Translations under genes and position numbers: made by a program | Assembly: GCA_002269645.1 (NCBI GenBank) | Contig: NIVC01001508.1 | Span: forward strand, 108,792 to 172,791 | DNA from: Macrostomum lignano | Taxonomy: Eukaryota | Length of the DNA: 64,000 bases | Direction of reading: 5' to 3' | In this document: positions 1 to 23,945 of the stretch, one piece after another | Layout: every line of letters begins with the position of its first letter | Position numbering within the stretch: the first letter of the stretch is position 1 | The notes under the pieces: generated by a model | Databases searched by the model: none | What the model was told of the DNA's origin: nothing | The model's input: the letters and a program-made list of their open reading frames with translations, nothing else

Positions 1-3000
1 TATAAATAAATAAGTTTTATGAAATTGGGCAAACAGAGAGGCCTGAATATGAAAATAGCGTGCACTCAGCAAGGAACCTTGACATAGTGTATCAAGCGCG
101 CGTTTGAGCAAAGCACTCGAAAAAGAGGAATGTTGCCAGTTTCAGGTAAATAACCCGAAATTGAGCCCTGGATCCCAAATACTGTACAATCCAACTCTGT
201 ATTTGTGAGCAAAGCCAGAGCTCTATAAGTGTATAAAAGTTTGACAGCAAAAGGCAACAAAAATTGTTCCAAAGAAAAACTTCGCAAGTCCCTATACGTG
301 AGGTATTTAAATATGGCGCACGACCTCGCAGCTCACAGCCGATCGCTGTCCTCAGCCATGGCGACTGCCGGGTTTCGCTCAACAAACGCAGCGGTGCAGA
401 GCGGCCTCGCAATGGCAGCTGAGGAGCTGGGCCGACTGCTGGCTAAAAGCTGCCACATCTTTGGCAGCTACGCTGACGGCTGGGGCTCCAACCTGTGCTG
501 CATCAATGGAGACGTCGCTCCAGACTCCGACATCGACGTGACGTACATCATGACAGACGCGAGCCAGCAAATCCACATTCACCCGCAAGTCGCTGACGGA
601 CAGCGGGCCGAATTTCGACACAACGACTGCCAGCTGACTGAGCCTGCGGAGTACGAGGACGGGCACGTCAAGGCGCGCGTTCGCAGTAAGGAAATTCTCG
701 CTATAATATCATACTAATGCATTAGATATGAAATTTAGATATGTACAGAAACGAAATATATCATCTACATCTGTCCTGAAAATGCAGTTTTAGCGCCGAA
801 TATCGCATTGGAAGTGTCGCAGATGTTCCCTGCAATAGACCTGATTTTGGCGCATTCCTGCTGCGGCTACCCTCACATCGAGCTGCTGCGGCCCGGATAC
901 AGGACTTGCATGTCCGATGACATCATGAGGGCGCTCAGAGAAGAGGTGCTGGGCGAGTCGCCAAGGTGCCACGCCGTCAGCAGCGCGCCGCCCGGTCTGG
1001 AGGGCAGCCGACTTCGAGTGAGCACAACCCTGCTGGAAAGGTCCGTCATGCAGCATCTCACCACCGTGCAGGGTCAGTTCTTCATCCTCGTCAAGTTCCT
1101 CATCAAGAGGGTGATCGGCAGCAGAGTGAGCGGTCTGAAGACGTACGTTGGCAAAAACTTGCTGTTCTACATGCTCGACGAGACACCGGCGAAGGACTGG
1201 AAGTCGGACAACCTGCTGGCGCTGGTGCAGCACTCGTTGGACATTCTCGTGGCAATGATGGAGAGCTCAGACTCCGAGGACGCCTGCATGAGACATTTTT
1301 TCTTGCGTGACGCCAGAGTGTTCTTCAAGCGAGAGCACGACTCAAAATCGAGGATTGTAGCAGCCGTCCGTCAGTCAGCAGACAACCTGCTCAGCGACCT
1401 GAAACCGTTCAAAGAGTCTCTGCCTAAATTTGAGGTCAACGTGATTCTCCTTTCGTTTATCTCTTACTACCTTCTAGCAGTAGAGTTACTGGAATGCAGT
1501 GATTTCAGCTTGACAAAATACGCTTCCACAATGCAGACGGCAACTGAGCTTTGGTTAAGCATCAGGAGTGAAGCTCCGGTCGGGTCTCGGTCTGGCAGAT
1601 TGACTCAACTTTTGTCGGACGTCGAGCGCCAGATTCCAGACAGCGCTCAGGTCGGCAAAGCCTATCTCAGAGCCGCTGCTCTCTTCAAAATGGGTCAGCT
1701 TGTCACACCAGAGCTGGAGGAGGCGGCAGGTGCATCTCTGGGCTATATTCGGTGTCCGGAGGGCGACGACAACTCCCTGACGGTGGCTTCGGCCAAGTCA
1801 CTAGCTGTGGACAAGCTTGTGCAGACTCGCTGCCTGGGTGTCACAGCGGCAAACGGCCAAATAGTGGACTGCCCGAAGCTGGTTAATGAATACGGGCCGG
1901 TTGTGTCTTTGTTTGAGAAGCACCTGTGCGGCTTCAAAGTGACGAGGCAGCAAATGCTTCTGGCCTTGGCTTCCGGCTCCCTTTGCGCAAGACTCTGGAT
2001 GAGTAATGTGAGTGCTCAAGAGATCGGGGGTCGCTTGTTTATTATTGGAAATGAGCTCTATTCACTCTTTTGAGCACCCAATTCCTAGTTAGTAGCAAAA
2101 ATGGAATACGAGCGTAGAAACGTTAGGGAGAAAAGCTTTTAACTAGCGCCGCAGCTTCAAACTATATGCTTGAATAGAAAACTCCTGAATACTAGCGATT
2201 GCGCAATAGGTGTCTAAATACAATTTGCACTGGTCCAAATCGAACACAAAGCACCATGCTCCGTTCTCCGCTTCAAGGCAACCGAGTACAACTCAAGGAA
2301 CACTATAGTGGGCAGGCATCTGCGTCACTTGGATATTTTTAGGCAGATCAGCGTTCAAAGACAAAGCGGTCGGCAGCAAGACGCTCAAGACGGAAGAGGG
2401 GACAATCGAGGAGACCCAGACGAGTCACGAGGCGATTCGAATGACAAGAGTTCCCAACAATGAAACCATATTAGACAGCTACTCTCGTGAATTAATTAAA
2501 AGTTCAAAGCAGCTACAAGTGCTGAAAAGTATCTCGACTATCTAAAGTGAATTTCTGACTCTGCAAAATTCAGATGTTAAAGCCCTAACCGCGCTCACCC
2601 TAGTTAACGACAGCAAGCTTTAATATTCTATACTTTTTCTAATTGTAGAAATTTTTGATGGGATATTGGGATATCTGTTTAACCCAGTCCGACGATTTTC
2701 ACAATTTTTTATCCGAGCTGTTTGTCATGAAAAGTTGATGTGGAAGCGTAGCTCTTTACTTATTTCGACTGCTGATTAGCACTTCTTTGTCTTTGTAATG
2801 AACATGCAGCTGCCTAATCATGAAGTGAAGACGCTTCTAAAAATGGTATATAGTTAAGGAGACTGTGAATCATATTTCAAACGGTAAAAATAACCACACG
2901 ACAACATGGTAATTCTGATTGGGCAGATATGAGTCTGTTTTCAAACGCTTCAAAATGAATTCTTAAATTGACAGAGGCGTAAGCGTAAGCAGGAATTCTA

Positions 3001-3085
3001 ATTGGAGGGTGCCGCAACCTTGATTGGTGCAAATATTTGGTTTTCTTGTCTCTAGGTGGGCATCCCTTTCTCTTGGTGGGCGCCC
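1..3085. repeat. Segmental duplication copy A (partner about 21088-24575)
   Basis: Near-identical sequence at an offset of about 21.09 kb covering upstream DNA, exons, introns and about 1 kb downstream. Copy A runs off the window start. Confidence 0.95.
313..2444 (+). CDS. Mab-21/cGAS-like nucleotidyltransferase (cGLR-type), copy A, spliced. Exons about 313-685, 788-2007 and a putative last exon 2343-2444
   Basis: GT-AG intron 686-787 (gtaag...tgcag) joins the two ORFs in frame. Motifs: GSYADG...SDIDV, AIDLILA (third acidic residue), LRVSTTLLE (cf. cGAS WRLSFS..E), LKTYVGKNLLFY, CMRHFFL, followed by a helical C-terminal region. The last exon and any additional short in-frame intron near 1435-1480 are inferred. 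Confidence 0.8.
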
Positions 3086-3378
3086 AGCTGTCTCTTGATG
3101 TCCACGCCAGTCTGTTGGTAGGTGTAAAACGAGTGAGGTTTGAGATTGCGAGAAAACCGTTTTGGCGCTCAGGCCTGACAATTGATATATATTATAAGCC
3201 GAAGATTGAGGTGGGGTTTGGGTGTTGCACACGCACGGGCGCAACCGCACGTTGCAAACAACCACCCCCCATATACAAGCACGTACAAATATGACTACGA
3301 ACAACATTAGAATATTTATAGGTGCATAGAATGCTCACACCACTTCCCCACCAGGGTTTAAAAGACACAACACAATGT

Positions 3379-6300
3379 CTATGGCAAAAGTTCACAGAAA
3401 ATCAAGCATTCACATTGGGCGATAAAAATCAGGAGGTCTTCGCTCTCTGGCCGACCGTCTCGGCAGCTGAGCCTCTTGCTGATTGGTCTCGGTCGCTGCA
3501 GCTGAGCCTCTTGCTGATTGGTCTCGGTCGCTGCAGCTGAGCCTCTTGCTGATTGGTCTCGGTCGCTGCAGCTGAGCCTCTTGCTGATTGGTCTCGGTCG
3601 CTGCAGCTGAGCCTCTTGCTGATTGGTCTCGGTCGCTGTCTCATCCGGTCCGCCGTTACCGTCGAACAGCTGCACCCAGGCATCAGGCGCCTGGAGCTGA
3701 GGGTCAACCAGTCCGTCAGCAGCCTCATCTGCGGTAGCCTGCAGGTCGTCGCCGGGCCGTAAGGAGTTGCGCCGTTCCACAAATGGTTTGAGCCGGTCGT
3801 GGTGCACCACCTGCCTGCGTCGCATCCGCACGCCGGGACCCGAGGCCGGCCGCACTCGGTAGTTGACCTCGCCGAGCCTCTTCAAGATGATGTACGGCCC
3901 GGTCCAGCGGTTACTGAGGCTTTTTGATCTGCCAGGTTTCACCACCTTGCAGCTCAGCATCACCAAGTCGCCCTCTTTGTACGGCCGGAACCGAGTCTCC
4001 ATGTTGTACCGCTCGTTGCGCTCGGTCTGTGACGCCTGCAGTTGCTGATGGACACGCGCCCGGCTGTCCAGCAGGCGCCTCTGAGTTGCCTCTGCAAAGT
4101 CCAGCGCATCAGTGAAGCCATTCAATGCTTTGGGCAGCTTCGAGTCGATTGGCAGCCTTGGTGGCCATCCGTGCAGCGTCTGGTACGGCGACAGGCCCGT
4201 GGTCGAGTGCACCGAGCTGTTGAAGGCCCACGTGACGAAGGCAAGTTGGAGGTCCCAGTCGTCCTGATCCTCTGCCACAACCGTCGCTAGCATGTCACCA
4301 AAGGTTCGGTTTCCGCGCTCGACCAGGCCGTTGCCGCTGGGATGGAAAGGCAAAGTGCGGCTTTTCTGCATGCCGAGCCGCTGGCACAGGGACTGGAACA
4401 GATGGCTTTCGAATTGACACCCTTGGTCGCTGTGGATTGCGTCTGGGACGCCGTGCCGAAGCGCTACCTGCCTGACCATAGCGTCGGCCACCCGCTCAGC
4501 CTCGATGCTCGGTAGAGCGCAGGTCTCCATCCACTTTGAGAAGCAGTCAAAGATGCTCAGCACGTAACTGTTGCCTCGTGGTGTCCTTAGCAGCGGACCC
4601 TTGATATCGATCTGGACCATCTCCCATATGGCCTCGACGGCAGTGGAGTCGCTTGCAGTGGTGATCGCTGCGGCCGACTGCTGTTCTTCCGCCGAAGACA
4701 AGCGGCGCAGCTGGCGACCAGTTCTTGACGTCGTTGTGCATGCCCGGCCACCAGCAGCGGTCGGCGAGCTTGTCCAGCGTTCGGTCTGTGCCGAGGTGAC
4801 CGCTGCAGGCGGCGTCGTGCGCGTCAGCCAGGAAATGCGCACGCAGGTGGCTGGGCACCACCGGTTTGCCCTGCCGGACCAGCTCACCGTGTTGCCCGAT
4901 CTCGATGTCGCCATTTGCTATGAATTCTTCGAATCGCTGCTGACAGCCTTTGGACAGGTGGACGAAGCTGTCACTGATCGCCTTGAAGACATTCTGCAGA
5001 AGGCTGTCTCGGAGCTGCTCTGCCAGGAAGTCATCGCGATTTGCTAGTTGAGTGACAGCCGTCCGACTGAGCAGGTCTGGCACCACGTTCTCCCGCCCTG
5101 CCGATAGCAGAGCGCGAAATTGAACTGCTGGATGGTGTCGAGCCAACGTGCCAGCCGACCCTCTGGCTCCTTGGTCTGCAGCAGGCCCTTGAGCGGCTGG
5201 TGATCGGTAACACAGTGAAGTCTTTCACGTTGCACAGGTAGGCTCTGAAGTGCTTGAGACTCCAAACCAAGGCGAGCAGTTCCCTGTCAGTGGCCGAGTA
5301 ATTTCGTTCCGCCTTGTTGAGGGTCCTGAAGGCAAACGCCACTGGAAGCTCCGCGTCTCCGTAACGCTGGCAGAGAACCGCACCCACTGCGATGGCGCTG
5401 GCGTCGCAGCTCAGGACAAATGGTCGGCTGAAGTCCGGCAGGCGAAGCACAGGTGCTCGCCCAAGTTGGTCCTTGAGCGTCTGGAAGGCCGTCTCGCACT
5501 CGTCTGTCCAGGTGAAGCCCGTCTTCTGTGTTGCAGCATGCAGTGGTGCTGCTGTCTTGCTGAAGTCCCTGATGAATCTGCGATAGAAGCACAACATACC
5601 GATGAATCGTCGCACCTCCTCGGCAGAACTTTGTTACTGAATCTTGGCCAGGGCCTCCACTTTGTCCGGATCCGGCCGAATTCCTTCCCGGCTGACGATG
5701 TGGCCCAGGTACTTCACGCTCCTGTGAGCGAACACCGACTTGTCCTTGTTGAGCTTCAGTCCCGCAGCTCGCAGCCTGTCAAAAACTTTGCGCAGGCTGG
5801 CCAGATGCTCTTCGAAGCTCCGACTGAACACGATCAAGTCATCCACGTAGACTAGCACCTCCTCCCAGGTCAGGCCGGACATAACGAGCTCCATTAGCCT
5901 CTGGAAGGTCGCAGGAGAGTTGCAAATACCGAAGCCCATCTTCTTGAACTGCATAAGGCCTCGCGTGGAATAGAAAGCAGTCTTGTAGCGGTCTGCCTCG
6001 TCGACCACGACCTGGTTGAGCCCCTGCTTGCAGTCGATGGTGGTAAACCAAGAGCAGCCCGCCAGAGCATCCATCGATTGTTGCAGGTGCGGCAGGGGGT
6101 AGGCGTCCTTGATGGTCACAGCGTTCAACTGACGCCAGTCGGTGCATAGGCGGATGTCGCCGCTCTTTTTCCGGACGACGATCAGATTGCTGGCCCAGGG
6201 CGAGTTGGACGGCTCAATGATGTCGTGCTCCAGCATCTGGCCGATTTTCTGGTCGACCTGGTCACGAACCGGCAGCGGAATCGGTCGCTGGCGCTGCTTG

Positions 6301-7606
6301 TAGGGCTCGCTGTGGAGCCGAGGTCGTACTCGTGAGTGCTGAATAGGTCACCGTTCGCCTTGAGCAGTGCCAGTAGTCTCTGCCTTTCAGCCGCATCCAA
6401 GTCAGGGTTGACATCCCAGCAGTCCGACTGCTTGACTGTGCCAGCGCTGTTGTTGATCAGGTCGGCAGCTTCAAAAGAGCCGACGGCCTTGTTGGCGTAG
6501 AGCAGCACCTCCTCGGAGCCTAAATTGCACACCCGGACTGGAATCTTCTGATCAGCTGAAACGGTCAAAACTCTCGAGACAAGCAAACCAGTCGCTGGTA
6601 AAGTTGGCGTCGGGCTCGAAGATGCCTTGCTCGTCTTCCGACTTGACGCGGAGCCACACCAGCTTTTCGCTGCGTGCTGGAACACTTGTGTTGCTTTCCA
6701 CTCGAGCAACGAGGGTGCCGGTCACCATTCGGACGCTTGAGCTGCTGTTGAAAGAACGGGACTTTCTCTCCGTTGAGGCATACGGTCCTACCAACGATGT
6801 CGATCTGAAGCTCTCGGGTGGCTTGGGTGATGAAGTCCATGCCGAGGATGAGATCAGACTGATGTTCTCCACCACGTTGAGCTCGTGGACGACCTTGACT
6901 GACTGGCCGACTTGAATTGTGGCTCGGGAAATCCCGATGCAACTCAGGCGGCCACCATCGACCGAAGTCGGGCAGCAGCTTCACCGGGCTCGATCTGAAG
7001 GCCGCAGACTTGCGCGAGGCTGCGGCTGATCAAGGATGTCTGTGCGCCAGTGTCGAGCAGGAAACTGACCTCCTTGCCTTGCAGAAGCGCACGCACGAAG
7101 ATGGAGAGTGCAGATTGGGCACTTGATTGACGGGTTGGAGCTGGCCCTTCGCTGCCAACCCTCAGAAGTTTCCCGACGGCCGAGCCTTTGACGGACAGAC
7201 AGCCGCGCCGTGGCCCCAGCCGGAGCAGTTGAAGCAGCGACCTTGGCCCTGAGATCCGCCAGCAGGGCACCGGCGGGCGATGTGGCCTTCTTACCGCACC
7301 GAAGCAGCCTGATGACCGCTGCTGCTGATCTCTCTGTCTGCCGCCACCGCGTCCTCTCGCGCTGCCGCCCCTCGTCACCGCAGCCGTCAGGGTCTCCAGC
7401 TGCTGCTCCAGCCGTGCCAGTCGATCTTCAACCATCGCCACTGCGGGCGAGTTGCCTGGTTTGCATTTTCTCGCGATTTGCTCCAGCCTCGTGGCCTGCT
7501 CGACCAGCTCCTCCAGCGTGCAGGAGTCCAGGTCCCTGTCCTTGAGCAGGGTGTCGCGTATTTCCGCAGTCATCAGCTGAAGTCGATAATTTTCACGAGT
7601 AACCAA
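3379..7606 (-). mobile_element. Ty3/Gypsy LTR-retrotransposon internal region (gag-PR-RT-RH-IN), frameshifted, no LTRs found
   Basis: Protease LLDTGA; RT SPWASNLIVVRKK and YVDDLIVFS; RNase H LSCDAS and YSATDRELLAL; integrase zinc-finger H-H (AHDAACSGHLG), IHSDQG, GNGLVERGN and a GPY motif. Gypsy domain order, spread over several frames. Confidence 0.93.
3462..3637. repeat. 35-bp tandem repeat x5 (GCAGCTGAGCCTCTTGCTGATTGGTCTCGGTCGCT)
   Basis: Read directly from the sequence; lies at the 3' end of the Gypsy pol. Confidence 0.95.
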
Positions 7607-8032
7607 AGGAAACTCTTAATTAACAAATTCATGAATTGCTGATGTTTCCAAAACAGAGGTTGTTTTAACGTTCTAGTCAATGCATTTAAACATTTTATGT
7701 TTTTAAAAACATTTTCTGTCAAAACGAGTACTCGTAATTTTTTAGTTCTTTAATTTTTTAGTTTTTAGTTTTTTAATTCTTTTTAAAGAATTCAGTGTTT
7801 TATTACATGCAGTAGCTGTATCCCCTGTGTGTGTTAGAATTTTACGGGTCAGCTACAATAACCGGCACAATCAACTTTGCATGATTTCCGCTCCAGTTTG
7901 AAGACATTAAATTTATATTGGAAAAATCACCGAATTGCTTCCTGTCGAATTCAATATAAAAGCAAGCGTGCATCGTGATTATAGGCTAAACAATTTCAAA
8001 ATCAGTGAAAGCACTGAAAAAACGATTGAACA

Positions 8033-8498
8033 ATGAACTTCAGTTTGAAATTTCGGACTCGAGTCGTCGTGCTGCTGCTTGTGGCAGCCGCAGGCGTCAG
8101 TGGCGGCTACGACTGCAACCCAGGTTACGCCATAGAGGTCGTTCCGGGCTACGAAGAAGCGCTGATCCGGGGCTTAATGAACGATTTTGGAATGAGCCCA
8201 GATGAGCCTCTCATTCCCGTAGACTACAAGGAACTCGTAACCCAAATGGGTATGACGTTCTGCATGGGCCAAACGGTCAGCCACGACTGGGGCGACCCCT
8301 GTGACAAGCGGGTGGTGCATCAGTGCTCGTTCTGCCCAATTTTTTCACCGGTGTTTTCACCATGCGACAATTCTGACGCTTCGAGATGCTATTTTGCTAA
8401 ATAATAACTATACTTATGCATCATCATGCGGTGCCTGCTGCACGAAACCACTGACAACCAATTGGCTATGCGGATGCACTCAGAATCTGGGCTTTTGA
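8033..8498 (+). CDS. Small secreted cysteine-rich protein, orphan. 123 aa as written; 154 aa with 12 Cys if one A at 8399-8401 is removed
   Basis: N-terminal basic plus hydrophobic signal-like segment (MNFSLKFRTRVVVLLLVAAAGVSG). Seven Cys before the TAA; the Cys-rich text continues in the adjacent frame (SCGACC...WLCGC). Confidence 0.6.
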
Positions 8499-8789
8499 TT
8501 TAAATACACGTATTGTACTGAAAGAACTGTTGCAGTCAAATTTTAAGCCTAACTTACGAGCTCGTAATTAACAGTAGGAATACCAAGCCATTTTCCGCCC
8601 GTCGAACTACCAAAGAGGGGGGAAGTTCCCCCCCCCCTGACAATTTTTTTTGCACCGGAACGGAGCAACGCAGGCACAAGAAATTCAAGAACACGGGCCA
8701 ACTTTTTTTGCGCACCTGCTCAAACAAGAATCAAGTCGCCAGCCCTTCAGACCGTCGAGATATTGGACGATTCTGCCAGAATGTCGGAT

Positions 8790-8875
8790 TTTTCCCATAA
8801 GTGCTAGTGTATGATCAGTACACCCCTGTGCGACAAGCAGCACTGCGCCTCAACACAGCCTTGCCAAGTCTCCAA
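8790..8875 (+). pseudogene. Possible fragment of a hAT transposase C-terminal dimerization domain
   Basis: YTPVRQAALRLNTALPS resembles the hAT YP.V....LRYNT.LPSS motif but breaks off before VERLFS. Confidence 0.35.
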
Positions 8876-8934
8876 ATTTCAATAGCTCGTCGATGTGTCT
8901 GTGTCTGCATCAGCAGCTGTGACTTCGTTGGTCC

Positions 8935-9330: not shown

Positions 9331-9488
9331 TTAACATTTCTGAAGCTCTTAAAATTTTTTAAGCACGTACATTGCTTTAGCTAAGCTTGAACTCATGTTG
9401 CTGTACATTTATATTATTAATACACATATTCTATACATAGGAGCTACATACTATATTTTATTCTACAAGCTGTTTAGTTTATTCAACT

Positions 9489-13294
<3,806 letters not shown>

Positions 13295-14212
13295 ACAAGC
13301 TGTTGAAACCCGCGGATTTTGAACCCGGGGAATTCCAATCCCCGGAACTACTTTTGCATGTATTCTGAAATCTAAGGCCATACACAAACAAATTAATAGT
13401 TAGTAGGATAGAGGTAGACATAAAATGGAGCACATTTGTGTAAAATTAGGTTTTGAGGCAAACGTTGATATTGTTTGCTGGAATGCTAGGGTACTCCACA
13501 GAATGCCAGGCAATGTCTGTCTGACTCTAAAACATGTATTGGCAAAATCTGGCCTCTCCCTGACTCTCCCTATGTCCCTTGGATCCTTTAAAATTTCTAT
13601 CGTCTCTTCTGTTTCCTTTCTTCTCTCTCATCCCTCGTCTCTCGTCTCTCCTCTCTTCTTTCGTATCTTCCCTCATCTCTCTTCTCTTTCATCTCTCTTA
13701 TCTCATCTCTTCCCTATTCTTTTCTCTCTCCTCTCCTCTCTCCTCTCTACTCTTTCGTTTTCTCTCTCCTCTCCTCTCTCTTCTCTCCCCCTCTTCTCTC
13801 GTCTCTTCCTTCTCCTCTCTATTCTTTTCTCTCTTCTCTTAACTCTCTCCTCTACTCTCTCATCTCTCCTCTCTACTCTTTCCTCTCTCTCTCCTCTCTC
13901 TTCTCTTCTCTCGTCTCTTCCTTCTCCTCTCTATTCTTTTCTCTCTTCTCTTAACTCTCTCCTCTACTCTCTCATCTCTCCTCTCTACTCTTTCCTCTCT
14001 CTCTCCTCTCTCCCCTCTTCTCTCGTCTCTTCCCTCACCTCTTTCCTCTCTCTCTTTCCTCTCATCTCTTTTCTTGTTTTATCTCTTCTCTCTCCCCTCG
14101 TCGCTCGTCTCTTCCCTCACCTCTCTTCTCTCTCGTCCGCTCTTTCATCTCTCCTTTCTCTTCTTTTATATTTTCTCTCTTATCTCTTCTCGTTTCTCTC
14201 TGCTCTGCGCTT

Positions 14213-14290
<78 letters not shown>

Positions 14291-16348
14291 CCCATCTCTC
14301 TTCTCCTCTCTACTCTCTCCCCTCTTCATTCTCCTATTTCCTCTTCTCTCTCCCTGTCTCTCCTCTCTCCTCTAGTCTCTGTAATCTCTTCTCTCTTATC
14401 TCTCCTCTGTTCTCTCCACTCTCCCATCTCTGGTCTGTTCATCTGCTCTCTCATCTGTCATCTTTACTCTCTTATACGTTCTCTCACGTATCTCCTCTGT
14501 ACTCTTCTCTTCACCTCTTCTCACTCCTCTCTTTCCTTACTCCTCTCTTCTTTTCTTTTCCCTTTCTATACTCTCTCTCCTCTATTATCTTCTCTCGTCT
14601 CTCTGCACTCTCCTCTCACCTTTTTCATCTCTCATCTCTTCTTTGATCTGTCTCATCTTTACAATCTCATCTCTTTCCTCTCTCCTCCTCTTCCCTTTAC
14701 TCTCTCATCTCTCCTTTCTCCCCTCTTCTTACACCCCTCTCTTATCTCTATCTCTTCTCTTCTCACCCCTTCTCTCCCCCTCTTATCTCCTCTCTTTTCT
14801 ATCCTTTCTACTCTCTCCTCTCTAATCTCTCATCTCCTCTTGACCCTCTGTCATCTTCTTTCTGCTCTCTCATCTCTCATCTCCTCTCATCTCTTCTCAC
14901 TCTTCTCTACTCTCCTCTCATCGATCCTCTGTCTCATCTCTCCCCTCTTCTCGCCTTTACTCTTTCCTCTCCCTCCTTTCTCCCCTCCTCTCACTTCTTC
15001 CTCCCTTCTTCTCTGCTCTCTCCTCACCACTTGTCTCTCCTCTTATATTCCATGTTTTCTCATACCCCCTCTCGCCTCTCCTCTCTTCTAATAGTCTATT
15101 CCTTCTCCTTTCCACTCTCATCTGGCCCGCACATAAGCTGGATTCTTTATCTGGCTTTTGAAGTAAAAGTCTGCCCATTCCTGCTTGGTAAGCCATGCAG
15201 TTTGTGGGACGTACTACTCTCATGGTTGTTCTCATGCTTTGATCACGTCATTTTTCTTGCCAATTTGCAGCCCTGAAAGGAATTTGTGTATTTTCAGCTC
15301 CACTGCAGTCTGCATCAGTCTAACAACCAAGGAAATAAGCATTTCTTAGGACATTTAATATTTAAAGTACTTTTAAGAGAAACCTAAAATTTCCATGGTG
15401 TGACTAATTTAGTAGGGTTGTATTGCATTGCATCGCCTTTTCATAAATCTTTCGCTTTTACAAACCATGCTGGATAGTGGATTCCCTCGATTTGCCCATT
15501 GCCAATTGCCATCCACTGTTAAACTGCTGCAGAGTTTGCCTATACAGAGGGGAGGGCAGTGGTTAGAATTTCTCACTAAACTGTCATGGCTAAACGTAGC
15601 CTCTCCACTCTCGGTGTGCAGAGAAGGCTATAAATAAAGTTATTCCAAAACACTGTACATTCGCTATGTACATTGAGCCCTATCGCCTGACCCTTCGTCT
15701 GGCTCTGGGGGGAATGAGTGATTGAGTGGCACAAACAACAGAAAAAGCAGACAAACTTTACATGTTTACAGTTTCTGTTCTGATTGAGTTAGAGAGTTGA
15801 AACTTTACATTTAGACAGAGAATAAGTCAATGAAGAATTGTGTCAAGTTTGAAGTCAATCGCTTTACTTGGAGCAAACTTATGGCAGCTGAAGGTTAGTC
15901 AATTTTGAAACCCTTTTACACATCTGGGCCCAGATCGGGAAAGAGAGGCAGGCGGGCGGAGGTTGGGGTGGCTGCCTCGCTGAAAAAAACAGCCAAACTT
16001 AAAAGTGCACAGCGGCTTTCAGGATTAACTTTGAGATTTGAAATTTTACACGATTGTGTCAAAATAGTTGAAAATTGCCTGTGTCAAATTTGAAGAGAAT
16101 CGGTAGAAGTGGAGCGGCGCTATGGAGGATTTAGTGAAAAAATCGCGCATTTTGAGCAGTTTTTTGTACTTTTAGGTAGGAAGACTTGAGTCTAGGAAAT
16201 TAAAAGGTAGCCTAAGACATTTTCCGTAGTGAGTTTAGGGTGGGTGTAAAGTTTGGTGTAATTTGGTTGAGTGGTTTGGGAGTCCATAGCGATCAAAATT
16301 GTCCACACACACACACACACACAGAGTTTTGATTTTTATATGTAGAGA
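13295..16348 (+). mobile_element. Non-autonomous Helitron/Helentron-like element, unit 2 (head-to-tail copy)
   Basis: Same start and end motifs and colinear internal sequence as unit 1; followed by TT. Confidence 0.6.
13570..15125. repeat. Polypyrimidine low-complexity tract with a (CT)n core
   Basis: Homologous to the tract in unit 1. Confidence 0.95.
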
Positions 16349-16520
16349 TTAAAATAGCCTAAAGCCTGCTCCGGAAAATTTGCAGTTTTCCCATATAAGT
16401 TTCAACGCTGACTTGGCAGAATTGTAGGAGTTCACTTACAACATACATACAGACAAACATCGCACCAACTTTAGTATTAACGGTTTTAGTATTAGGAGAG
16501 AGAAGATAGAAGATAATATA

Positions 16521-17223
16521 CCTTTTTACGTTCTATTTGATAAAAACTGCAACCAATTTGGCCACGGCTCAGCCTGACCATAGACATAGAATTTTCCACA
16601 GACAGCCACCGCCAGCGGCAACCAATTTGGCAAAAACTGCGAGCTATTTTGCCAGCTTGAAGATAGCAGCTGCTCTGATGGCGAATCGTGGGCCGTACCA
16701 AAAGATAAGTCAGCTGGATCGAGAGCGAATCGTGAGAGCGTACAGGAGTGGCGATGACTGGGGAGAGCTTGGCAGAATGATGGGGATGAAGAAACCGACA
16801 GTGAGGAACATCGTGACCACGTATGAACGAACTGGTAGAGTTGGCACTCTGCCAAAAGGAGGAGTGAAGAGGATGGCGCTGACGGAGGCTATGGTGGACA
16901 CCATTGTTCAATTCGTCGAAGGTCAACCTACTGCCTCTCACGCCTCTCAAGTGCCTGCGCTGGATCAACCATTCCCAGACGTACTTCAATCGGTGCTTGA
17001 ATGCTGAGGACATAATGTTCTGACTTCGTGCATGTATTGTTAACATTCTTTATCGTTATTGTTATGCTATTGAGCTGCTATCTTCAAGCTGGCAAAATAG
17101 CTCGCAGTTTTTACCAAATTGGTTGCCGCTAGCGGTGGCTGTCTATGGAAAATTGCTGCGGCTGCGTCAGGCTGAGCCGTGGCCAAATTGGTTGCAGTTT
17201 TTATCAAATAGAACGTAAAAAGG
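16521..17223 (+). mobile_element. Internally deleted Tc1/IS630-like DNA transposon with ~150-bp TIRs and TA TSD
   Basis: TA|CCTTTTTACGTTCTATTTGATAAAAACTGCAACC... is the reverse complement of ...TTTATCAAATAGAACGTAAAAAGG|TA. ORF 16678-17007 encodes an HTH-like N-terminus (ISQLDRERIV...KPTVRNIVTTYERTGRV). A transposase-like C-terminus (CLRWINHSQTYFNRCLNAEDI) follows out of frame; no DDE core. Confidence 0.85.
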
Positions 17224-17448
17224 TATATTGAACCCAATTTTTATGCAGAAAGGGTTATGCTTTTAAAAAATAAAAAAACCGATTGAATTTACTGGCACGC
17301 AAATGAAATTTAAGATCAAGTAAAGATAATTACTGGTATTATAATAAAAAAGAAACGAAAATTAGCGCAAAAGCATGATAGCTACTACCGTACATTCTCA
17401 AGAAATCCAAGAATGATGACAAAGTTTTTCATTATCCTTAAATATCCT

Positions 17449-19218
17449 TCAATTTTCTGATGACATGCACAACAAATTCGTGGCCGGAAATCTGATCGTG
17501 CTCCTTCTGGCTGGATTTTTACTGTTGGTTGTAGCAGGTGTCGCACAAGTAGACATCGTTTCGATGCCTCTTGCACACGAAACTAGCGCAGTTGGCACAA
17601 TTTTTGTTTCGCGTTTCAGCGAGTACTTCTCCGCACTTGTGCTCCTTTCCGCCATGCACAGTCGGCATCGCCCTCGCTCTCCTGCTGGCCGATCGGCGGT
17701 AGCGCATTCAGATAGCTGATAATTTGGTTGAATTTTCAGCACCGTGTTGAAAAGACTACGTAGATGAATTGACATGCCGGTTTGGGTCATTCGCACGGCG
17801 TTCAATCTGCGGTGGAAGCAACCCGGAAGCAGCTTGAAGGAGAAATTCTTTGCGAGTTAGGCCCGTGTGACCTGAAAGACGGTAAACCGTATGTCCGTTG
17901 ATCCACACCACATTGAGCATGTGTCCAGTGAAAATTGTCTTTTCAAGACAGCGCGATATGCGATGGCAGTTCATAGTGGTAACCATTCTGTTGATCGTGT
18001 CGGTGCCGGCCTTCGTTGCGTTGTAGTGCTGGATCAGCTCTGGTTTGTTTTTTGGAGGCACACGTCGGCTGTCATGGTGATTAGTGGATAACAGAATTAC
18101 AGTCCTCCGCTTGCTTGAGCACGCACGACTGTAAGAGGCCCGTCATAAAGGAACTCCGGCTGACTTGGTCTCTTGTTGCCCTTGAACTGAGGTGGCAGGC
18201 GATCAGCGGTAATGTTTACCCAAAAGCCTTCAAAGTTGTCGGATAGACGAAGCAGCACTTGCTCGCCACTCTAGTATTTGCCGACGCCACCGCTCTCCGC
18301 TTTCATCAGCAGGTTGTTGTATGCGGTGTACAATTTTGATTTGTACACATAATGCAGTGTGTCACTGCTTTCTTCGATCGGATTTCGAGCAGTCGTTGCC
18401 ATGAAAAACTTCAGGCCGTTTCCTGCTGGCTTGTCCTTCATGAAGACAGCAAAGCTGCAGTCATTGCTATAGTATCGAATGAGTTGTTCATCGATACAAA
18501 TGTAGGCTCCAGGCAGGACGGGCATTGCGAGGCGATCTTGAAAAGTGCTATACAGAGCTCGAATGCCGTAAATCGGATCTCTGGCAGCCTTTGCAATCCG
18601 GCTCGCGCGACATTCAAACGAGAGACAACTCCATAATTGCGAAAATCTGTTTCTCGAGAAGCCTGTCACCAAAAAAGCGTGAATCGGATGACAAGGGTCG
18701 ACAGACCAAATTTGCTGTACACTTGCGTTGTGCATGTTGTGGGCTCCTAAATAAAGTAGTGCTCCAATGAAGCCTTCCATTTCAACAACATCACAGTCTT
18801 TGAAGTCATTGCCAAGTCTGCGATGGCCAGTCTCATTTGTCGCTCTGACAATTTCTTAACAGCATCTCTGGGCAAAAAATAGGACGCATTCCGTTGGCGA
18901 GTCGAAAGAAAAGTTTGGATTGATCTGCGGTTCGAAACGCAGCACAGAGTCGCTTGGCCATCGCCTTGGGTGTGGATGTTGAGTGCTATAGCTAAATTCA
19001 TGATCTGGTAGGGGCTTGATTTCATTAATTACTTGTAGTTTTGACGGCGCTAAAGATACTTCGGGCGACTCCTCATCGGACAGAAACTCGTCTGCGTCAG
19101 CTTCACTTACTTCCGAATCACTTGAATCGGTACTGGTCGATCTTGATTCGTCAGTTGGGTCAGAACCTTTGGGGCATCTGCCGCTATAGCTCGCCATTGC
19201 AATCCAAAGCAACGACAT
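17449..19218 (-). mobile_element. piggyBac transposase remnant (frameshifted; ends not identified)
   Basis: ICIDEQLIRY...FMKDKPAGNGLKF, NITADR, KPELIQHYNATKAGTD and a C-terminal Cys cluster (CRLC...CANC...VCKRH...CDTC). Confidence 0.85.
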
Positions 19219-19319
19219 CTTTGCAATCCTTTTACTCTGTATGCCAAAATCCGGAGATTAGGCGATGCTATTTGAACTAGTAAATAAAATCTTGCTGAAA
19301 AGACACGGTGAAATATACT

Positions 19320-20876
19320 CAGCAACATTGAAAAGTCGCCATCACTCCGTCTAGCTGTACTCGCCACTTTTGAGAGTGCAAGTAAAGTCTCGGAATCTTG
19401 CGAGTGACGCAACTTGGCTATGCCACGCGACAGACTTGGATTGAGGAATGAAGTAGGGGAGCGGTGTGCGAGGGTGGGACGGATTAAAGCTACCCGGATC
19501 AGTTTTATTGGCATCTTTTTTTCAGAACAGTCCAAGAGAAATTGCTCACTAGCTAGCGCACAGAGTGGCGACTTTTTAACGTTGCTGGGTATATATGGTC
19601 GAAATATATACTTGATCTACGAGCAATCATTATCTAGACAAGGACTACTTAAAGCAAAGCAAAAGCTGCATCTTCCGAGAAATATACGTTACTTTTGTCG
19701 TCCTTGTATCCGCCATTCCTTAGATCTATCAAGCGAACACTCGATAAACATGCAGGTATTAATTTTGCCACCGGAAGGGGAGCCTATTGGGAGCCAGGAA
19801 GCAAATTCGGTGCGCAGCAAGGTGCAAGTCCACGGCATATGAACCAGATTAGAGATCGGCAAACTCCGACCCGCTAAGCCCCTCTCTATCCGGTCCCCTC
19901 AGGTGCTTTGAAACTTTGCAATAGCAATTCAGCCTGCTCGATCAAGGCTCATCTCTTCTCAGCTCGATCTGCTCTGTCTCCTCTTTTCTCATTTATTCCC
20001 TCGCCTCTCCTTTCTCCCATCACTCCTCGCTCTTCTCTAGCTACTCCCTCTCTTTTCTGCCCTCTTCTGACCCTCAGTCAGTCGTTAGGTTTCTTTACCT
20101 GCCCTTGAGGTAAAAAAGTTTTCGAACTCTTGAGCTATTGTACACATGAGGAGCGAGTTTAACGATACTGTGGTATTCAAAGTGTGTTGACTTGGCTGGG
20201 TTGATTTTTGTTTGTGGTGTTAGCTTGCACTTTATTTAGTGTTTTAGTGTGGTGTTTTTTACTGTTTCGCTGTGGGCGCCTTTCTACAATATCTTGATGT
20301 ACGCTCTTACTGATGTACGTTCTTTATTCTGGACACTCTTGTTCTCAACCCTTAAACCTTATCCACTAAATGTATCGTGCTCAGTATTTACAATATAAAT
20401 CGCAGTCGCTTGCCTCGTATCAAGCGTACATGTATACTGATCTTCTACAATCTAAAGTGAAGTCTTCACAGAAAGTTTACTTGTACCTCTGAATAAAAAA
20501 ACAGATAAAATTGTCTATCAAACAAGCTGCTAGAAAGTTCAGCATGTTCCGTTTTACGAGAAAATATATATACTCAGAAACATCGAAAAGTCGCCATCAC
20601 AGAACATTCCGCGAGTGACGCAACTCAGCTACACCACGCGGCAGACTTGGGTTGAGGAATGAAGTGGGGGAGCGGTGTGCGAGGGTTGGGTGGATTATTA
20701 AAGCTACCTCTCAGTTTTCTCGCGAGCACTGCATGAGCAGAAAAAAGGAGGGAAAGGTGACCCAGAACCAGAAAGAAAAGCAGGGGAAGGAGAGGAGTCA
20801 GAAATTAATTAATTGAAGCAGAAATCCGCTGGACGGCAGGGCGCATAGAAACAAAAGCTGCATCTTCCGAGAAATA
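19320..20876. repeat. Diverged direct repeat pair (about 19320-19690 and 20575-20876)
   Basis: Shared blocks in the same order: GAAAAGTCGCCATCAC, GAGTGACGCAACT..CCACGCG.CAGACTTGG.TTGAGGAATGAAGT.GGGGAGCGGTGTGCGAGGGT, AAAGCTACC, CAAAAGCTGCATCTTCCGAGAAATA. Confidence 0.75.
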
Positions 20877-21402
20877 GCAGAAGACTGAGTCGGAGCGCCA
20901 TGCAGTCACATTTGTGGACTGAGACGTCGCCCTCAGACATGCCTGCATATTGAGAAGCCACCCTGAAGCAGACGGGTGAAGGTTGAATTGAGGCTGCCAA
21001 CGGGACTCTAGTGCGGGCGCCCAGGACAGAAAAAGTGAGTGTTGCGGCTCGACAACCTGGTTCTATGTAGAAATCTATTTAGAAAATATATAAGATAAGC
21101 TTTATGAAACTGGGAAAATGCTGATGGGAGCGAAAAGAGGGGCCCTAAATATACTAATGAACTCAGCAAGGAACATTGACATCAAGCGCGCGTTTTGAGC
21201 AAAGCACTAAAAAAGAGGACTGTTGCCAGTTTCAGGTATATAACCCGAAATTGAGCCCTGGATCCCAAATACTGTACAATCCAACTCTGTATTTGTGAGC
21301 AAAGCTAGAGCTCTATAAATGTATAAAAGTTTGACAACAAAAGGCAACAAAAATTGTTCCAAAGAAAAACTTCGCAAGTCCCTATACGAGAGGTATTTAA
21401 AT

Positions 21403-23945
21403 ATGGCGCACGACCTCGCAGCTCACAGCCGATCGCTGTCCTCAGCCATGGCGACTGCCGGGTTTCACTCAACAAACGCAGCGGTGCAGAGCGGCTTCGC
21501 AATGGCAGCTGAGGAGCTGATCCGATTGCTGGCTAAAAGCTTCTACATCTTTGGCAGCTACGCTGACGGCTGGGGCTCCAACCTGTGCTGCATCAATGGA
21601 GACGTCGCTCCAGACTCCGACATCGACGTGACGTACATCATGACAGACGCGAGCCAGCAAATCCACATTCACCCGCAAGTCGCTGACGGACAGCGGGCCG
21701 AATTTCGACACAACGACTGCGAGCTGACTGAGCCTGCGAAGTACGAGGACGGGCACGTCAAGGCACGCGTTCGCAGTAAGGAAATTATCGCTATAATATC
21801 ATACTAATGCATTAGATATGAAATTTAGATATGTACAGAAACGAAATTTATCATCTACATCTGTCCTGAAAATGCAGTTTTAGCGCCGAATATCGCATTG
21901 GAAGTGTCGCGGATGTTGCCTGCAATCGACCTGATTTTGGCGCATTCCTGCTGCGGCTACCCTCACATCGAGCTGCTGCGGCCCGGATACAGGACTTGCA
22001 TGTCCGATGACATTATGAGGGCGCTCAGAGAAGAGGTGCTGGGCGAGTCGCCAAGGTGCCACGCCGTCAGCAGTGCGCCGCCCGGTCTAGAGGGCAGCCG
22101 ACTTCGAGTGAGCACAACCCTGCTGGAAAGGTCCGTCATGCAGCATCTCACCACCGTGCAGGGTCAGTTCTTCATCCTCGTCAAGTTCCTCATCAAGAGG
22201 GTGATCGGCAGCAGAGTGAGCGGTCTGAAGACGTACGTTGGCAAAAACTTGCTGTTCTACATGCTCGACGAGACACCGGCGAAGGACTGGAAGTCGGACA
22301 ACCTGCTGGCGCTGGTGCAGCAGTCGTTGGACATTCTCGTGGCAATGATGGAGAGCTCAGACTCCGAGGACGCCTGCATGAGACATTTTTTCTTGCGTGA
22401 CGCCAGAGTGTTCTTCAAGCGAGAGCACGACTCAAAATCGAGGATTGTAGCAGCCGTCCGTCAGTCAGCAGACAACCTGCTCAGCGACCTGAAACCGTTC
22501 AGAGAGTCTCTGCCTAAATTTGAGGTCAACGTGATTCTCCTTTCGTTTCTCTCTTACTACCTTCTAGCAGTAGAGTTACTGGAATGCAGTGATTTCAGCT
22601 TGACAAAATACGTTTCCACAATGCAGACGGCAACTGAGCTTTGGTTAAGCATCAGGAGTGAAGCTCCGGTCGGGTCTCGGTCTGGCAGATTGACTCAACT
22701 TTTGTCGGACGTCGAGCGCCAGATTCCAGACAGCGCTCAGGTCGGCAAAGCCTATCTCAGAGCCGCTGCTCTCTTCAAAATGGGTCAGCTTGTCACACCG
22801 GAGCTGGAGGAGGCGGCAGGTGCATCTCTGGGCTATATTCGGTGTCCGGAGGGCGACGACAACTCCCTGACGGTGGCTTCGGCCAAGTCGCTGGCTGTGG
22901 ACAAGCTTGTGCAGACTCGCTGCCTGGGTGTCACAGCAGCAAACGGCCAAATAGTCGACTGCCCGAAGCTGGTTAATGAAATCGGGCCGGTTGTGTCTTT
23001 GTTTGAGAAGCACCTGTGCGGCTTCAAAGTGACGAAGCAGCAAATGCTTCTGGCCTTGGCTTCCGGCTCCCTTTGCGCAAGAGTCTGGATGAGCAATGTG
23101 AGTGCACAAGAGATGGGGGGTCGCTTGTTTATTATTGGGAAAGGAAATGACGTCTGTCGCGACTTTCCTAGTCATTTCTTTAGTGCATCTTCACTTGCCT
23201 CTGTTTACTGTTTTCTCTCTCTCTCTCTCTCTCTGTCTAGCTCAATCTTGTTATTCTTATCTCTCTCTCCCTTGCTGCGTTCTGATTGGCTCTCCTTTCT
23301 CGCCTCTTTCCTCAGTCGCGCACTCCATCCCCTTGTCTTATCTTGCACCCCAAAGTTAGTCTTATCTCGTATCTGTTTGGGCCCTGCGCCCACTTACTGG
23401 CTCCTTATCTTATTTATTCAATTTAACATCTAATTTAAATGTATATGTAGTATGTTTACTCTTATTATTTTCTCGACAACCCTATTAACTCTTTTGAGCA
23501 CCCAATTCCTAGTTAGTAGCAAAAATGAAATAGAAACGTTAGGGGAGAAAATCTTTTAACAAGCGCTGCAGTCATCAGAATGCAGATGTCTATGCCATCG
23601 CACCTGGCTGACATGATTTACGGTAGCTAATTATATATTAGCAGGTAAATGCAAGCTTCAAACTATATGCTTGAATAGAAAACTCCTGGATACTAGCGAT
23701 TGCGCAATAGATGTCTAAATCCAATTTGCACTGGTCCAAATCGAACACAAAGCACCATGCTCCGTTCTCCGATTCAAGGCAACCGAGTACAACTCAAGGA
23801 ACACTATAGTGGGCAGGCAACTGCGTGAATTGGATATTTTTAGGCAGATCAGCGTTCAAAGACAAAGCGGTCGGCAGCAAGACGCTCAAGAAGGAAGAGG
23901 GGACAATCGAGGAGACCCAGACGAGTCACGAGGCGATTCGAATGA
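21403..23945 (+). CDS. Mab-21/cGAS-like nucleotidyltransferase, copy B, spliced. Exons about 21403-21775, 21878-23097 and a putative last exon 23844-23945
   Basis: Colinear with copy A, same intron and same catalytic motifs. About 16 amino-acid differences by eye. Extra ~340 bp of CT/AT-rich sequence at about 23150-23490 in the inferred last intron. Confidence 0.8.

What the first reader, a model, noticed from the sequence alone, without database searches (positions are those of the whole stretch)
313..23945. Recently duplicated cGAS-like receptor pair: catalytic core invariant, substitutions concentrated just before the GS motif
Seen: both copies are open after splicing and keep the GS loop, DxD, the third Asp and the LKTY..K motif. 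Of about 16 amino-acid differences, five (R/H, L/F, G/I, C/F, H/Y) fall in the ~30 residues before GSYADG, while the ~150 residues from IDLILA to LVQ are identical. Known: in cGAS/cGLRs this N-terminal spine helix contributes to nucleic-acid sensing, and invertebrate cGLRs make cyclic dinucleotides. Inference: two innate-immune sensors that keep the same chemistry while ligand recognition diverges.
Basis: partly seen in the sequence, partly recalled or inferred. Interest (0 to 1): 0.7.

Follow-up and report, generated by a model that had tools for sequence, protein, structure and literature searches.

The report
Duplicated flatworm cGAS-like receptor genes
Two intact, about 98% identical copies of a cGAS-like (Mab-21 fold) enzyme gene lie 21 kb apart in what is almost certainly Macrostomum lignano DNA; they are ordinary recent members of a family already catalogued in this flatworm, and the evidence that their ligand recognition is diverging is weak.

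Summary
The duplication is real. A 3-kb unit (gene plus about 220 bp upstream and about 630 bp downstream) occurs twice in direct orientation (91-3097 and 21181-24585) at about 97-98% identity, separated by transposon-rich and minisatellite DNA. Both copies have three open exons. Its exon 3 uses the wrong acceptor and frame; the conserved frame ends at 2463 and 23958.

The proteins (592 and 590 aa) are near-identical to Macrostomum lignano 'Mab-21 domain-containing' proteins. A structure model matches oyster Cv-cGLR1 and cGAS best. The GS loop, D73/D75, D142 and the LKTYxxK motif are intact. Li et al. 2023 already listed this family as predicted cGLRs and cloned five M. lignano members.

The clustering is only borderline (scan P about 0.04-0.08), and the ratio of amino-acid-changing to silent changes there (6:1) does not differ from neutrality. 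The changes are split between both copies and mostly hit hydrophobic or family-variable positions. The invariant core reflects purifying selection (4 silent, 0 replacement changes). The proteins are mildly acidic (pI about 6.1), unlike known nucleic-acid-sensing cGLRs.

Verdict: new member of a known kind. Divergence in ligand recognition is not shown.

The parts
91..3097 (+). Duplicated unit, copy 1 (gene plus about 220 bp upstream and about 630 bp downstream)
   Evidence: Self-BLAST and MAFFT: 97.8% and 96.3% identity to 21181-24585. No collinear homology beyond the unit.
21181..24585 (+). Duplicated unit, copy 2
100..312 (+). Conserved promoter-proximal region of copy 1, with a TGTATAAAAGTTT (TATA-like) box about 75 nt before the ATG. 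The equivalent in copy 2 is about 21190-21402.
   Evidence: Alignment of copy 1, copy 2 and the 84% paralogue L001. A promoter role is inferred, not shown.
313..685 (+). Copy 1 exon 1: ATG, N-terminal helix, strand beta-1, GS (463-468), D73 (529-531), D75 (535-537). Donor CA|GTAAGG.
   Evidence: The start MAHDLAAHS matches the NCBI paralogue PAA85217.1, which starts MAHRELAAHS.
376..456 (+). Cluster of substitutions, codons 22-48: 6 replacement and 1 synonymous nucleotide changes. The copy 2 equivalent is 21466-21546.
788..2007 (+). Copy 1 exon 2: third catalytic Asp D142 (838-840), RVSTT..E and LKTYVGK nucleotide-site motifs, C-lobe helix bundle, and a family-specific C-terminal domain of about 200 aa (about 1387-2007). 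Donor AAT|GTGAGT.
   Evidence: Model of the C-terminal domain.
2278..2463 (+). Copy 1 exon 3 in the conserved frame (ATEYNSRN...DKSSQQ*).
21403..21775 (+). Copy 2 exon 1
21878..23097 (+). Copy 2 exon 2
23144..23653 (+). Intron 2 of copy 2: CT-rich insertions of 334 nt (23144-23477) and 84 nt (23570-23653) that copy 1 lacks. They do not touch the coding sequence.
23779..23958 (+). Copy 2 exon 3 in the conserved frame. Its stop is TAA at 23956-23958, two codons earlier than in copy 1.

Best explanation
The window carries two head-to-tail paralogues of one Macrostomum lignano gene from a large, lineage-specific cGAS-like receptor (cGLR / Mab-21 fold) family. A small 3-kb duplication copied the whole gene with its proximal promoter, and transposons and minisatellites now fill the 18 kb between the copies. 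The duplication is about as old as the divergence between this neopolyploid's subgenomes (silent divergence about 3%). Both copies remain intact and under purifying selection.

Each protein has three parts. The first is a nucleotidyltransferase domain of about 330 aa, with a GS activation loop, the metal-binding triad D73/D75/D142, and C-lobe nucleotide-site motifs RVSTT..E and LKTYxxK. The second is a family-specific alpha/beta domain of about 200 aa with no known fold relative. The third is a fast-evolving tail of about 60 aa, probably disordered.

By homology (inferred, not shown), each protein is a ligand-gated enzyme that makes a cyclic nucleotide signal. Its mildly acidic charge and lack of a zinc thumb argue against a cGAS-like DNA-binding mode. 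The ligand, product and receptor are unknown.

The amino-acid differences between the copies are what two constrained young duplicates accumulate at weakly constrained sites. The cluster before the GS motif is a borderline excess without a selection signature.
For: - Duplication anatomy.
- Intervening Ty3/Gypsy-type integrase and reverse transcriptase, piggyBac-type DDE and Tc1-type HTH fragments.
- Identity: the best hits are M. lignano Mab-21 proteins. P0001 differs from copy 2 at 2 residues over exons 1-2 and at 2 more in the exon-3 tail; P0160 is close to copy 1.
- Fold: model with pTM 0.78, whose top PDB matches are Cv-cGLR1 (8gjw) and cGAS.
- Motifs. The signature recurs in about 70 representatives at 50% identity.
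- Prior cataloguing: Li et al. 2023, Table S3, entries 89-93.
- Selection: omega 0.56 overall, 0.29 in codons 51-330, 0.37 in 331-531, and 0 in 139-272 with 4 synonymous changes.
- The differences fall on variable columns and derived changes are balanced between the copies.
- The conserved upstream 210 bp is present in both copies and in the paralogue.
- Silent and non-coding divergence of 2-3% compares with a published 2.2% between M. lignano subgenomes.
Against: - There is no expression, enzymatic or ligand evidence.
- Pfam gives only a sub-threshold Mab-21_C hit for this protein (23.7 bits against a 24.1 cut-off). Sequence-level similarity to solved cGLRs is weak (E = 0.015).
- The residue before GS is Phe, not the Q/T of the strict published motif.
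- None of the five M. lignano relatives cloned by Li et al. is named in the main text, which describes the 15 active enzymes.
- In the hand-picked window of codons 22-48, replacement changes nominally exceed the neutral rate (P about 0.01), so selection there is not excluded.
- Assembly copy-number errors are common in this genome.
Confidence: 0.72

Rival explanations
1. One reading: after duplication the two sensors keep the same chemistry, while positive selection on the N-terminal spine helix next to the activation loop shifts ligand recognition (neo- or sub-functionalisation).
For: - Five of 16 differences fall in 27 residues (scan P = 0.044). Seven nucleotide changes fall in 78 nt (P = 0.041).
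- dN/dS is about 2 in codons 22-48, and dN there is about 3-fold above the silent rate (nominal P about 0.01).
- The same segment has a lower omega (0.5-1.1) against the older paralogue.
- In cGAS the spine helix contacts DNA. This rests on established knowledge of cGAS structures, not on a test here.
Against: - The 6:1 replacement:synonymous count equals the neutral expectation (P = 0.44) and does not differ from the rest of the gene (Fisher P = 0.20).
- The window was chosen after seeing the data.
- Residues 47-48 are in strand beta-1, not the helix. Positions 40, 47 and 48 are hydrophobic positions in the family, and only R22H changes charge.
- Gly at position 40 also occurs in the paralogue P0006.
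- The protein is not basic (pI 6.1-6.2), so a nucleic-acid-binding spine is not evident.
Confidence: 0.12
2. Assembly artefact: the two 'copies' are homeologous or haplotype variants of one locus that the assembler placed in tandem.
For: M. lignano has three about 2%-divergent subgenomes, and expanded or collapsed variants are reported as common assembly errors. The divergence between the copies (about 2-3%) matches the divergence between subgenomes.
Against: Only 3 kb is shared. The 18 kb after copy 1 and the 39 kb after copy 2 show no collinear similarity. The left boundary of homology lies inside the window at about 64-91. An earlier assembly's proteome already holds at least four distinct variants of this gene, so several real copies exist.
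Confidence: 0.08
3. The proteins have the Mab-21 fold but are not signalling enzymes: they would be scaffolds or regulators like MAB21L1, or nucleotidyltransferases with another substrate.
For: - No activity is reported for any M. lignano family member in the text of Li et al..
- cGAS and STING are reported lost in the flatworms examined.
- The strict h[QT]GS motif is not matched.
- There is an extra domain of about 200 aa with unknown fold.
Against: S52, D73 and D75 are invariant in all 16 aligned family members (G51 is Ser in two of them), and D142 is kept in all but two doubtful gene models. The signature persists across about 70 diverged representatives. The nucleotide-site motifs RVSTT..E and LKTYxxK are nearly invariant. 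That degree of conservation is hard to explain without catalysis.
Confidence: 0.2

Closest known systems
Macrostomum lignano 'Mab-21 domain-containing proteins' A0A1I8HXT9 (P0001), A0A1I8J9H0 (P0160), A0A1I8IF86 (P0002) and A0A1I8HWK5 (P0159)
   Same: These are essentially the same genes in an earlier assembly. P0001 carries the copy-2 N-terminal states (H, F, I, FY) and differs from copy 2 at 2 residues over exons 1-2, plus 2 more in the exon-3 tail. P0160 carries the copy-1 states.
   Different: None is identical to a window copy. The database models start at Met16 and are annotated only by domain name. The tandem arrangement is not described in what I could read.
M. lignano predicted cGLRs catalogued and cloned by Li et al. 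2023 (Table S3 entries 89-93, e.g. PAA57558.1 = P0006)
   Same: Same family, with the same GS..(D/E)GWG..SD(I/V)D signature, the same LKTYxxK motif and the same C-terminal extension. P0006 is 43% identical to copy 1.
   Different: These are different and much older paralogues. The window pair belongs to a subgroup (with BOX15_Mlig005485) that is not among the cloned five.
Structurally solved invertebrate cGLRs: Cv-cGLR1 (8gjw) and Sp-cGLR1 (8gjy)
   Same: These are the best fold matches (probability 1.0), and Sp-cGLR1 is the best sequence-profile match (E = 0.015). The two-lobed nucleotidyltransferase cage and the catalytic motif layout are shared.
   Different: Sequence identity is only 14-20%. 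The window proteins have a 20-residue rather than roughly 11-residue spacer between GS and DxD, an added C-terminal domain of about 200 aa, and pI about 6. The characterised nucleic-acid sensors have pI above 8.5.
Vertebrate cGAS
   Same: Same fold. 'GSY' follows strand beta-1. An acidic triad is present. RLSFS..E corresponds to RVSTT..E and SYHVKT to LKTYxxK.
   Different: There is no zinc thumb (a gap in the alignment), no basic N-terminal tail and no basic surface, so these are not orthologues of cGAS.
MAB21L1/L2 developmental proteins (5eom)
   Same: Same fold. The C-lobe aligns structurally (about 200 columns, rmsd about 4 Å).
   Different: Per Li et al. (Figure 1 legend), the closely related Mab21L1/2/3 genes lack a predicted functional active site, whereas the window proteins keep a complete motif. 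The Pfam Mab-21 N-terminal domain was not detected.

Membership tests
cGLR (cGAS-like receptor), as defined by Li et al. 2023 | G[S/G] activation-loop motif plus [E/D]h[E/D] X50-90 [E/D] catalytic triad (the Methods wording) | tested here: met
   G51-S52, D73-I-D75-V, 64 residues, then I-D142-L in both copies. S52, D73 and D75 are invariant in 16 family members. Criterion read.
cGLR (cGAS-like receptor), as defined by Li et al. 2023 | Strict motif h[QT]GS X8-20 [DE]h[DE]h X50-90 h[DE]h (the Results wording) | tested here: inconclusive
   The regular expression fails only because Phe50 replaces Q/T. The GS-to-DxD spacer is 20 residues, at the upper limit. The M. lignano entries that the authors themselves accepted have the same deviation (VMGS, VFGS, ILGS).
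cGLR (cGAS-like receptor), as defined by Li et al. 2023 | [quoted passage not shown] | tested here: inconclusive
   C-lobe: Pfam Mab-21_C at 23.7 bits, just under the 24.1 cut-off. Paralogues carry PF20266. The profile hits Sp-cGLR1 at E = 0.015 and cGAS at E = 0.36. The N-lobe is recognised only by motif and by predicted structure.
cGLR (cGAS-like receptor), as defined by Li et al. 2023 | Predicted structural homology to known cGLR / CD-NTase enzymes | tested here: met
   AlphaFold2 model of P0001 (pLDDT 72, pTM 0.78). The Foldseek top hits are 8gjw (Cv-cGLR1) and many cGAS entries, with probability 1.0, about 355-380 aligned columns and TM about 0.5 on the target.
cGLR (cGAS-like receptor), as defined by Li et al. 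2023 | Ligand-dependent synthesis of a nucleotide second messenger | not testable with these tools
   This needs recombinant protein assays. No M. lignano enzyme is named in the main text, which describes the 15 active cGLRs.
Nucleic-acid-sensing cGLR subclass (cGAS, Drosophila cGLR1, Cv-cGLR1, Sp-cGLR1) | High isoelectric point (above 8.5) and a long basic ligand-binding surface | tested here: not met
   The pI is 6.1-6.2 for both the full-length protein and the Mab-21 domain. Criterion read. Surface electrostatics could not be computed.
cGAS orthologue | Zinc-thumb insertion (H-x5-CC-x6-C) between the lobes | tested here: not met
   hhalign places a gap opposite the cGAS zinc-thumb segment. 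No such motif occurs in the window proteins.
cGLR-STING pathway | A STING (or other cyclic-dinucleotide receptor) gene in the same genome | not testable with these tools
   The window holds none, and no searchable M. lignano genome was available. The literature reports loss of cGAS and STING in the flatworms examined, and nothing was found on Macrostomum.
MAB21L1/L2-type (non-catalytic developmental Mab-21) | Strong conservation of the Mab-21 N-terminal domain with an incomplete active site | tested here: not met
   There is no Pfam Mab-21 N-terminal hit, the catalytic motif is complete, and the family is a lineage-specific expansion.

The most novel reading that the evidence does not exclude
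Macrostomum, unlike other flatworms studied, would run an expanded, acidic cGLR clade with a private C-terminal domain of about 200 aa. This clade would sense a non-nucleic-acid ligand and signal through something other than canonical STING. Within it, this young pair would be caught in the act of adaptive remodelling of the helix and beta-1 packing that controls the GS activation loop: three smaller residues in copy 1 (F32L, L40G, F47C), while copy 2 gained H48Y and carries Ile at 40 and Phe at 47.
Probability: 0.1. Interest if true: 0.6.

Novelty: new member of a known kind. Interest (0 to 1): 0.3.

Why it matters
Most flatworms are reported to lack cGAS-like receptors and STING, so Macrostomum's large family is a useful exception for asking how this signalling works without the usual partners. 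That family was already catalogued, however, and this pair adds only a well-resolved example of a recent local duplication with both copies kept. It offers a natural two-allele experiment (residues 22-48) if anyone reconstitutes these enzymes. By itself it does not change what is known.

Tried and rejected
- Gene conversion from a diverged paralogue as the cause of the N-terminal cluster. Polarising with the 84% paralogue (L001) shows that the derived states are private to copy 1 (3) or copy 2 (3), not imported from that paralogue. More distant paralogues are too different to be donors. Rejected for known donors.
- Mosaicism among database variants (P0001, P0002, P0159, P0160). No four-gamete violation was found by hand. 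There is only one rooting conflict (site 32 against site 113), which is too little to claim recombination.
- Direct sequence match to solved structures with the single protein found nothing relevant.
- hhalign to human cGAS aligned only the C-lobe, with low probability.
- A spliced window protein could not be handed to the structure, representative-search or contig look-up tools. P0001 was used as a proxy.
- A fold search of the C-terminal domain found no significant match (best E = 0.8).
- Literature searches for Macrostomum with cGAS, STING or Mab-21 gave nothing specific beyond Li et al.'s tables.
- A search for STING in M. lignano was not attempted.

Full report
**What is in the sequence.** Self-comparison of the window shows one pair of long, high-identity direct repeats. 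These are 91-2051 with 21181-23142 (97.8% identical) and 2153-3097 with 23654-24585 (96.3%). A global alignment joins them into one unit of about 3 kb. The only large difference is a pair of CT-rich insertions (334 and 84 nt) in copy 2 at 23144-23477 and 23570-23653. Homology starts at about 64-91 and stops at 3097/24585. A sensitive BLAST of the 18 kb after copy 1 against the 39 kb after copy 2 finds nothing collinear. The unit is therefore one gene with about 220 bp of upstream and about 630 bp of downstream sequence. The DNA between the copies holds a Ty3/Gypsy-type integrase and reverse transcriptase on the minus strand (3379-6236 and beyond), long CT-rich minisatellites (9.5-16.3 kb), a Tc1-type HTH fragment and a piggyBac-type DDE fragment.

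**Gene model.**
They join in frame in both copies.
- The ATG at 313 is supported by the NCBI paralogue PAA85217.1, which starts MAHRELAAHS.
Every database homologue continues ...WMSN|ATEYNSRN...DKSS(QQ), which uses the acceptor at 2277|2278 and another frame.
- In the genomic sequence of an 84%-identical paralogue (L001, M. lignano contig NIVC01000340.1), that frame stays open despite two in-frame 3-nt indels.
- The corrected coding sequences end at 2463 and 23958 and give 592 and 590 aa.

**Checking the counts.**
Five differences (R22H, L32F, G40I, C47F, H48Y) precede GSYADG at residue 51.
- The identical block runs from residue 139 to 272. IDLILA to LVQ is 132 residues, not about 150.
- The corrected exon 3 adds three substitutions and a two-codon length difference.
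- Random placement of 16 differences on 564 positions gives at least five in some 27-residue window in 4.4% of trials (8.3% with the corrected model).
- At the nucleotide level, seven changes in 78 nt has P = 0.041.
- A longest identical run of at least 134 residues arises in 20% of trials.
- The cluster is borderline and the long identical run is not unusual as a run.

**What the protein is.**
- All named homologues are Macrostomum lignano proteins. The best are 'Mab-21 domain-containing proteins' that differ from the window copies at a handful of residues. The window is therefore M. lignano or a very close relative.
- Pfam gives only a sub-threshold Mab-21_C hit, and a plain sequence search of the PDB finds nothing.
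- A profile of 15 family members weakly hits Sp-cGLR1 (E = 0.015) and cGAS, aligning LKTYxxK with SYHVKT.
- An AlphaFold2 model of P0001 (pLDDT 72, pTM 0.78) has Cv-cGLR1 (8gjw) as its best PDB match, followed by dozens of cGAS structures and MAB21L1. All have probability 1.0 over about 355-380 columns, with TM about 0.5 on the target.
- In the model the order is helix (residues 23-41), strand beta-1 (47-50), G51-S52, then strand beta-2 carrying D73 and D75, and a later strand carrying D142. This is the canonical nucleotidyltransferase layout.
- The looser published cGLR motif is matched. The strict one fails only at Phe50.
- S52, G56-W57-G58, D73 and D75 are invariant in 16 aligned family members. 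G51 is Ser in two of them (P0005, P0009), and D142 is missing only in two doubtful gene models.

**The family.** An exhaustive profile search found 626 relatives, 76 of them at E < 1e-30 among representatives clustered at 50% identity. About 70 of the representatives I inspected carry the same GS..(D/E)GWG..SD(I/L)D signature, and many have long N-terminal additions such as ankyrin repeats. Li et al. [quoted passage not shown] Nevertheless, their Table S3 lists five M. lignano proteins of this very family among the 140 cloned for their screen, including PAA57558.1, which is P0006 and 43% identical to copy 1. Their Table S2 lists ankyrin-containing M. lignano entries. No M. lignano enzyme is named in the main text, which describes the 15 active enzymes. 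The kind of gene, and its presence in this species, is therefore already known.

**Selection.**
- Nei-Gojobori estimates between the copies are dS 0.029 and dN 0.016, giving omega 0.56.
- By region, omega is 0.29 for codons 51-330 and 0.37 for 331-531. It is 0 for 139-272, with four synonymous and no replacement changes (P = 0.004 against neutrality). It is about 2 for codons 1-50.
- The 6:1 replacement:synonymous count in the N-terminal cluster is what neutrality predicts (P = 0.44) and does not differ from the rest of the gene (Fisher P = 0.20).
- Taken alone, six replacement changes on 61 sites exceed the silent rate (nominal P about 0.01), but that window was chosen after the fact.
- Against the older paralogue the same segment has omega 0.5-1.1. 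Codons 51-138 are at least as relaxed (0.8-0.9), and the tail is neutral (about 1.2).
- Using the paralogue as outgroup, the seven changes in the cluster split into three derived in copy 1 (F32L, part of L40G, F47C), three derived in copy 2 (R22H, a synonymous change, H48Y) and one ambiguous. This rules out a single conversion tract from that paralogue and any one-sided burst.
- Across the gene, derived changes are balanced, so neither copy is decaying.
- The 16 differing positions lie on columns that vary more than average among distant paralogues (mean entropy 2.12 against 1.60; P = 0.004). The 139-272 block is the most conserved part of the family. The pattern 'core invariant, differences elsewhere' is therefore the expected footprint of purifying selection.

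**Bearing on ligand recognition.**
- Residues 47 and 48 lie in strand beta-1, not in the helix.
- Positions 40, 47 and 48 are hydrophobic throughout the family, so they are probably buried. Positions 22 and 32 are variable. Only R22H changes charge.
- Gly40 also occurs in P0006.
- The proteins have pI 6.1-6.2, both full-length and in the enzyme domain. Li et al. report pI above 8.5 for dsDNA- and dsRNA-sensing cGLRs and suggest that acidic ones respond to something other than nucleic acid.
- Nucleic-acid sensing is thus not the default expectation here, and nothing shows that the two copies differ in what they recognise.

**Age and reality of the duplication.** Silent and non-coding divergence is about 2-3%. 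This is close to the 2.2% genome-wide (1.1% coding) divergence reported between the three subgenomes of this neopolyploid, whose assemblies are known to contain mis-represented copies (PMC10733133). An artefact cannot be excluded without reads. The short shared unit, the unrelated flanks and the existence of at least four distinct variants in another assembly's proteome all favour real paralogues. The upstream 210 bp, including a TGTATAAAAGTTT box, is conserved in both copies and in the 84% paralogue. This suggests, but does not show, that each copy kept a working promoter.

**Extra domain.** Residues of about 325-531 form a helical and beta-strand domain conserved in the non-ankyrin members. 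A separate model (pLDDT 73) has no significant PDB match (best E = 0.8). Its role is unknown.

**Mechanism, with shown and inferred parts marked.**
- Shown: two intact paralogous genes; the cGAS/cGLR fold; a complete catalytic motif; purifying selection on both copies; a mildly acidic composition; and absence of a zinc thumb.
- Inferred from the family (Li et al. 2023 and cGAS structural work): each protein binds two NTPs with two metal ions at D73/D75/D142. It is switched on when a ligand repositions the GS loop, and it releases a cyclic nucleotide signal.
- Unknown: the ligand, the product and the receptor. cGAS and STING are reported lost in the flatworms studied, and I found no statement about Macrostomum.

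**Verdict.** The assignment to the cGLR family is supported and already published for this species. The inference that ligand recognition is diverging is not supported. This is a new member of a known kind, of modest interest.

Noticed in passing
window 3379-7606 (minus strand): Degraded Ty3/Gypsy-type LTR retroelement directly after copy 1. It has integrase (rve, Integrase_p58_C) and reverse transcriptase (RVT_1) ORFs split over several frames, and it probably marks the right-hand break of the duplicated unit.
   Followed up: partly
window 9489-16325: CT-rich minisatellite field (12-14-nt periods, translating as SL repeats). Inside it a block of about 2.1 kb is duplicated about 3.07 kb downstream (11182-13260 with 14210-16325, 91.7% identical).
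   Followed up: no
window 16537-17007 (+) and 18271-18780 (-): Transposase remnants between the two copies: a Tc1/Sleeping-Beauty-type HTH fragment and a piggyBac-type DDE_Tnp_1_7 fragment.
   Followed up: partly
window 1387-2007 and 22477-23097 (protein residues about 325-531): Family-specific C-terminal domain of about 200 aa (helices plus short strands, pLDDT 73) with no significant fold match in the PDB (best E = 0.8). It is under purifying selection (omega about 0.3).
   Followed up: yes
protein residues C185, H186, C291 and H294 (window about 967-972 and 1285-1296): Cys and His residues that are invariant across the family (PRCHAV and ACMRHFF) and could form a metal site different from the cGAS zinc thumb. 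The geometry could not be checked because model coordinates are not returned.
   Followed up: no
window 100-312, 21190-21402; L001 about 9800-10000: The upstream 210 bp, including a TGTATAAAAGTTT box about 75 nt before the ATG, is conserved between both copies and the 84% paralogue, although intron 1 (82% identical) and intron 2 (66%) have diverged more between copy 1 and that paralogue.
   Followed up: partly
window 29070-29546 (+): ORF with a clear phospholipid scramblase domain (Pfam PF03803, E = 5e-27), probably one exon of a neighbouring host gene.
   Followed up: partly
window 32.2-50.0 kb: A striking density of long tandem arrays: 36.5-38.9 kb (21-nt period), 40.8-42.0 kb (23 nt), 43.25-44.65 kb and 45.1-45.86 kb (26 nt), 48.2-49.1 kb, and others. 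Several overlap long ORFs that are probably not genes.
   Followed up: no
P0023 (1606 aa, M. lignano 'PAP-associated domain-containing protein'): A database gene model that contains a segment 89% identical to this gene, fused to a PAP/NTP-transferase protein. It is probably a merged annotation of neighbouring genes in another assembly.
   Followed up: no
L001 (NIVC01000340.1, 72697-95194): The 84% paralogue (BOX15_Mlig005485g1) sits alone between an ANAPC/TPR gene and a taxilin gene. It lies at a different locus with no tandem partner within 10 kb either side.
   Followed up: partly
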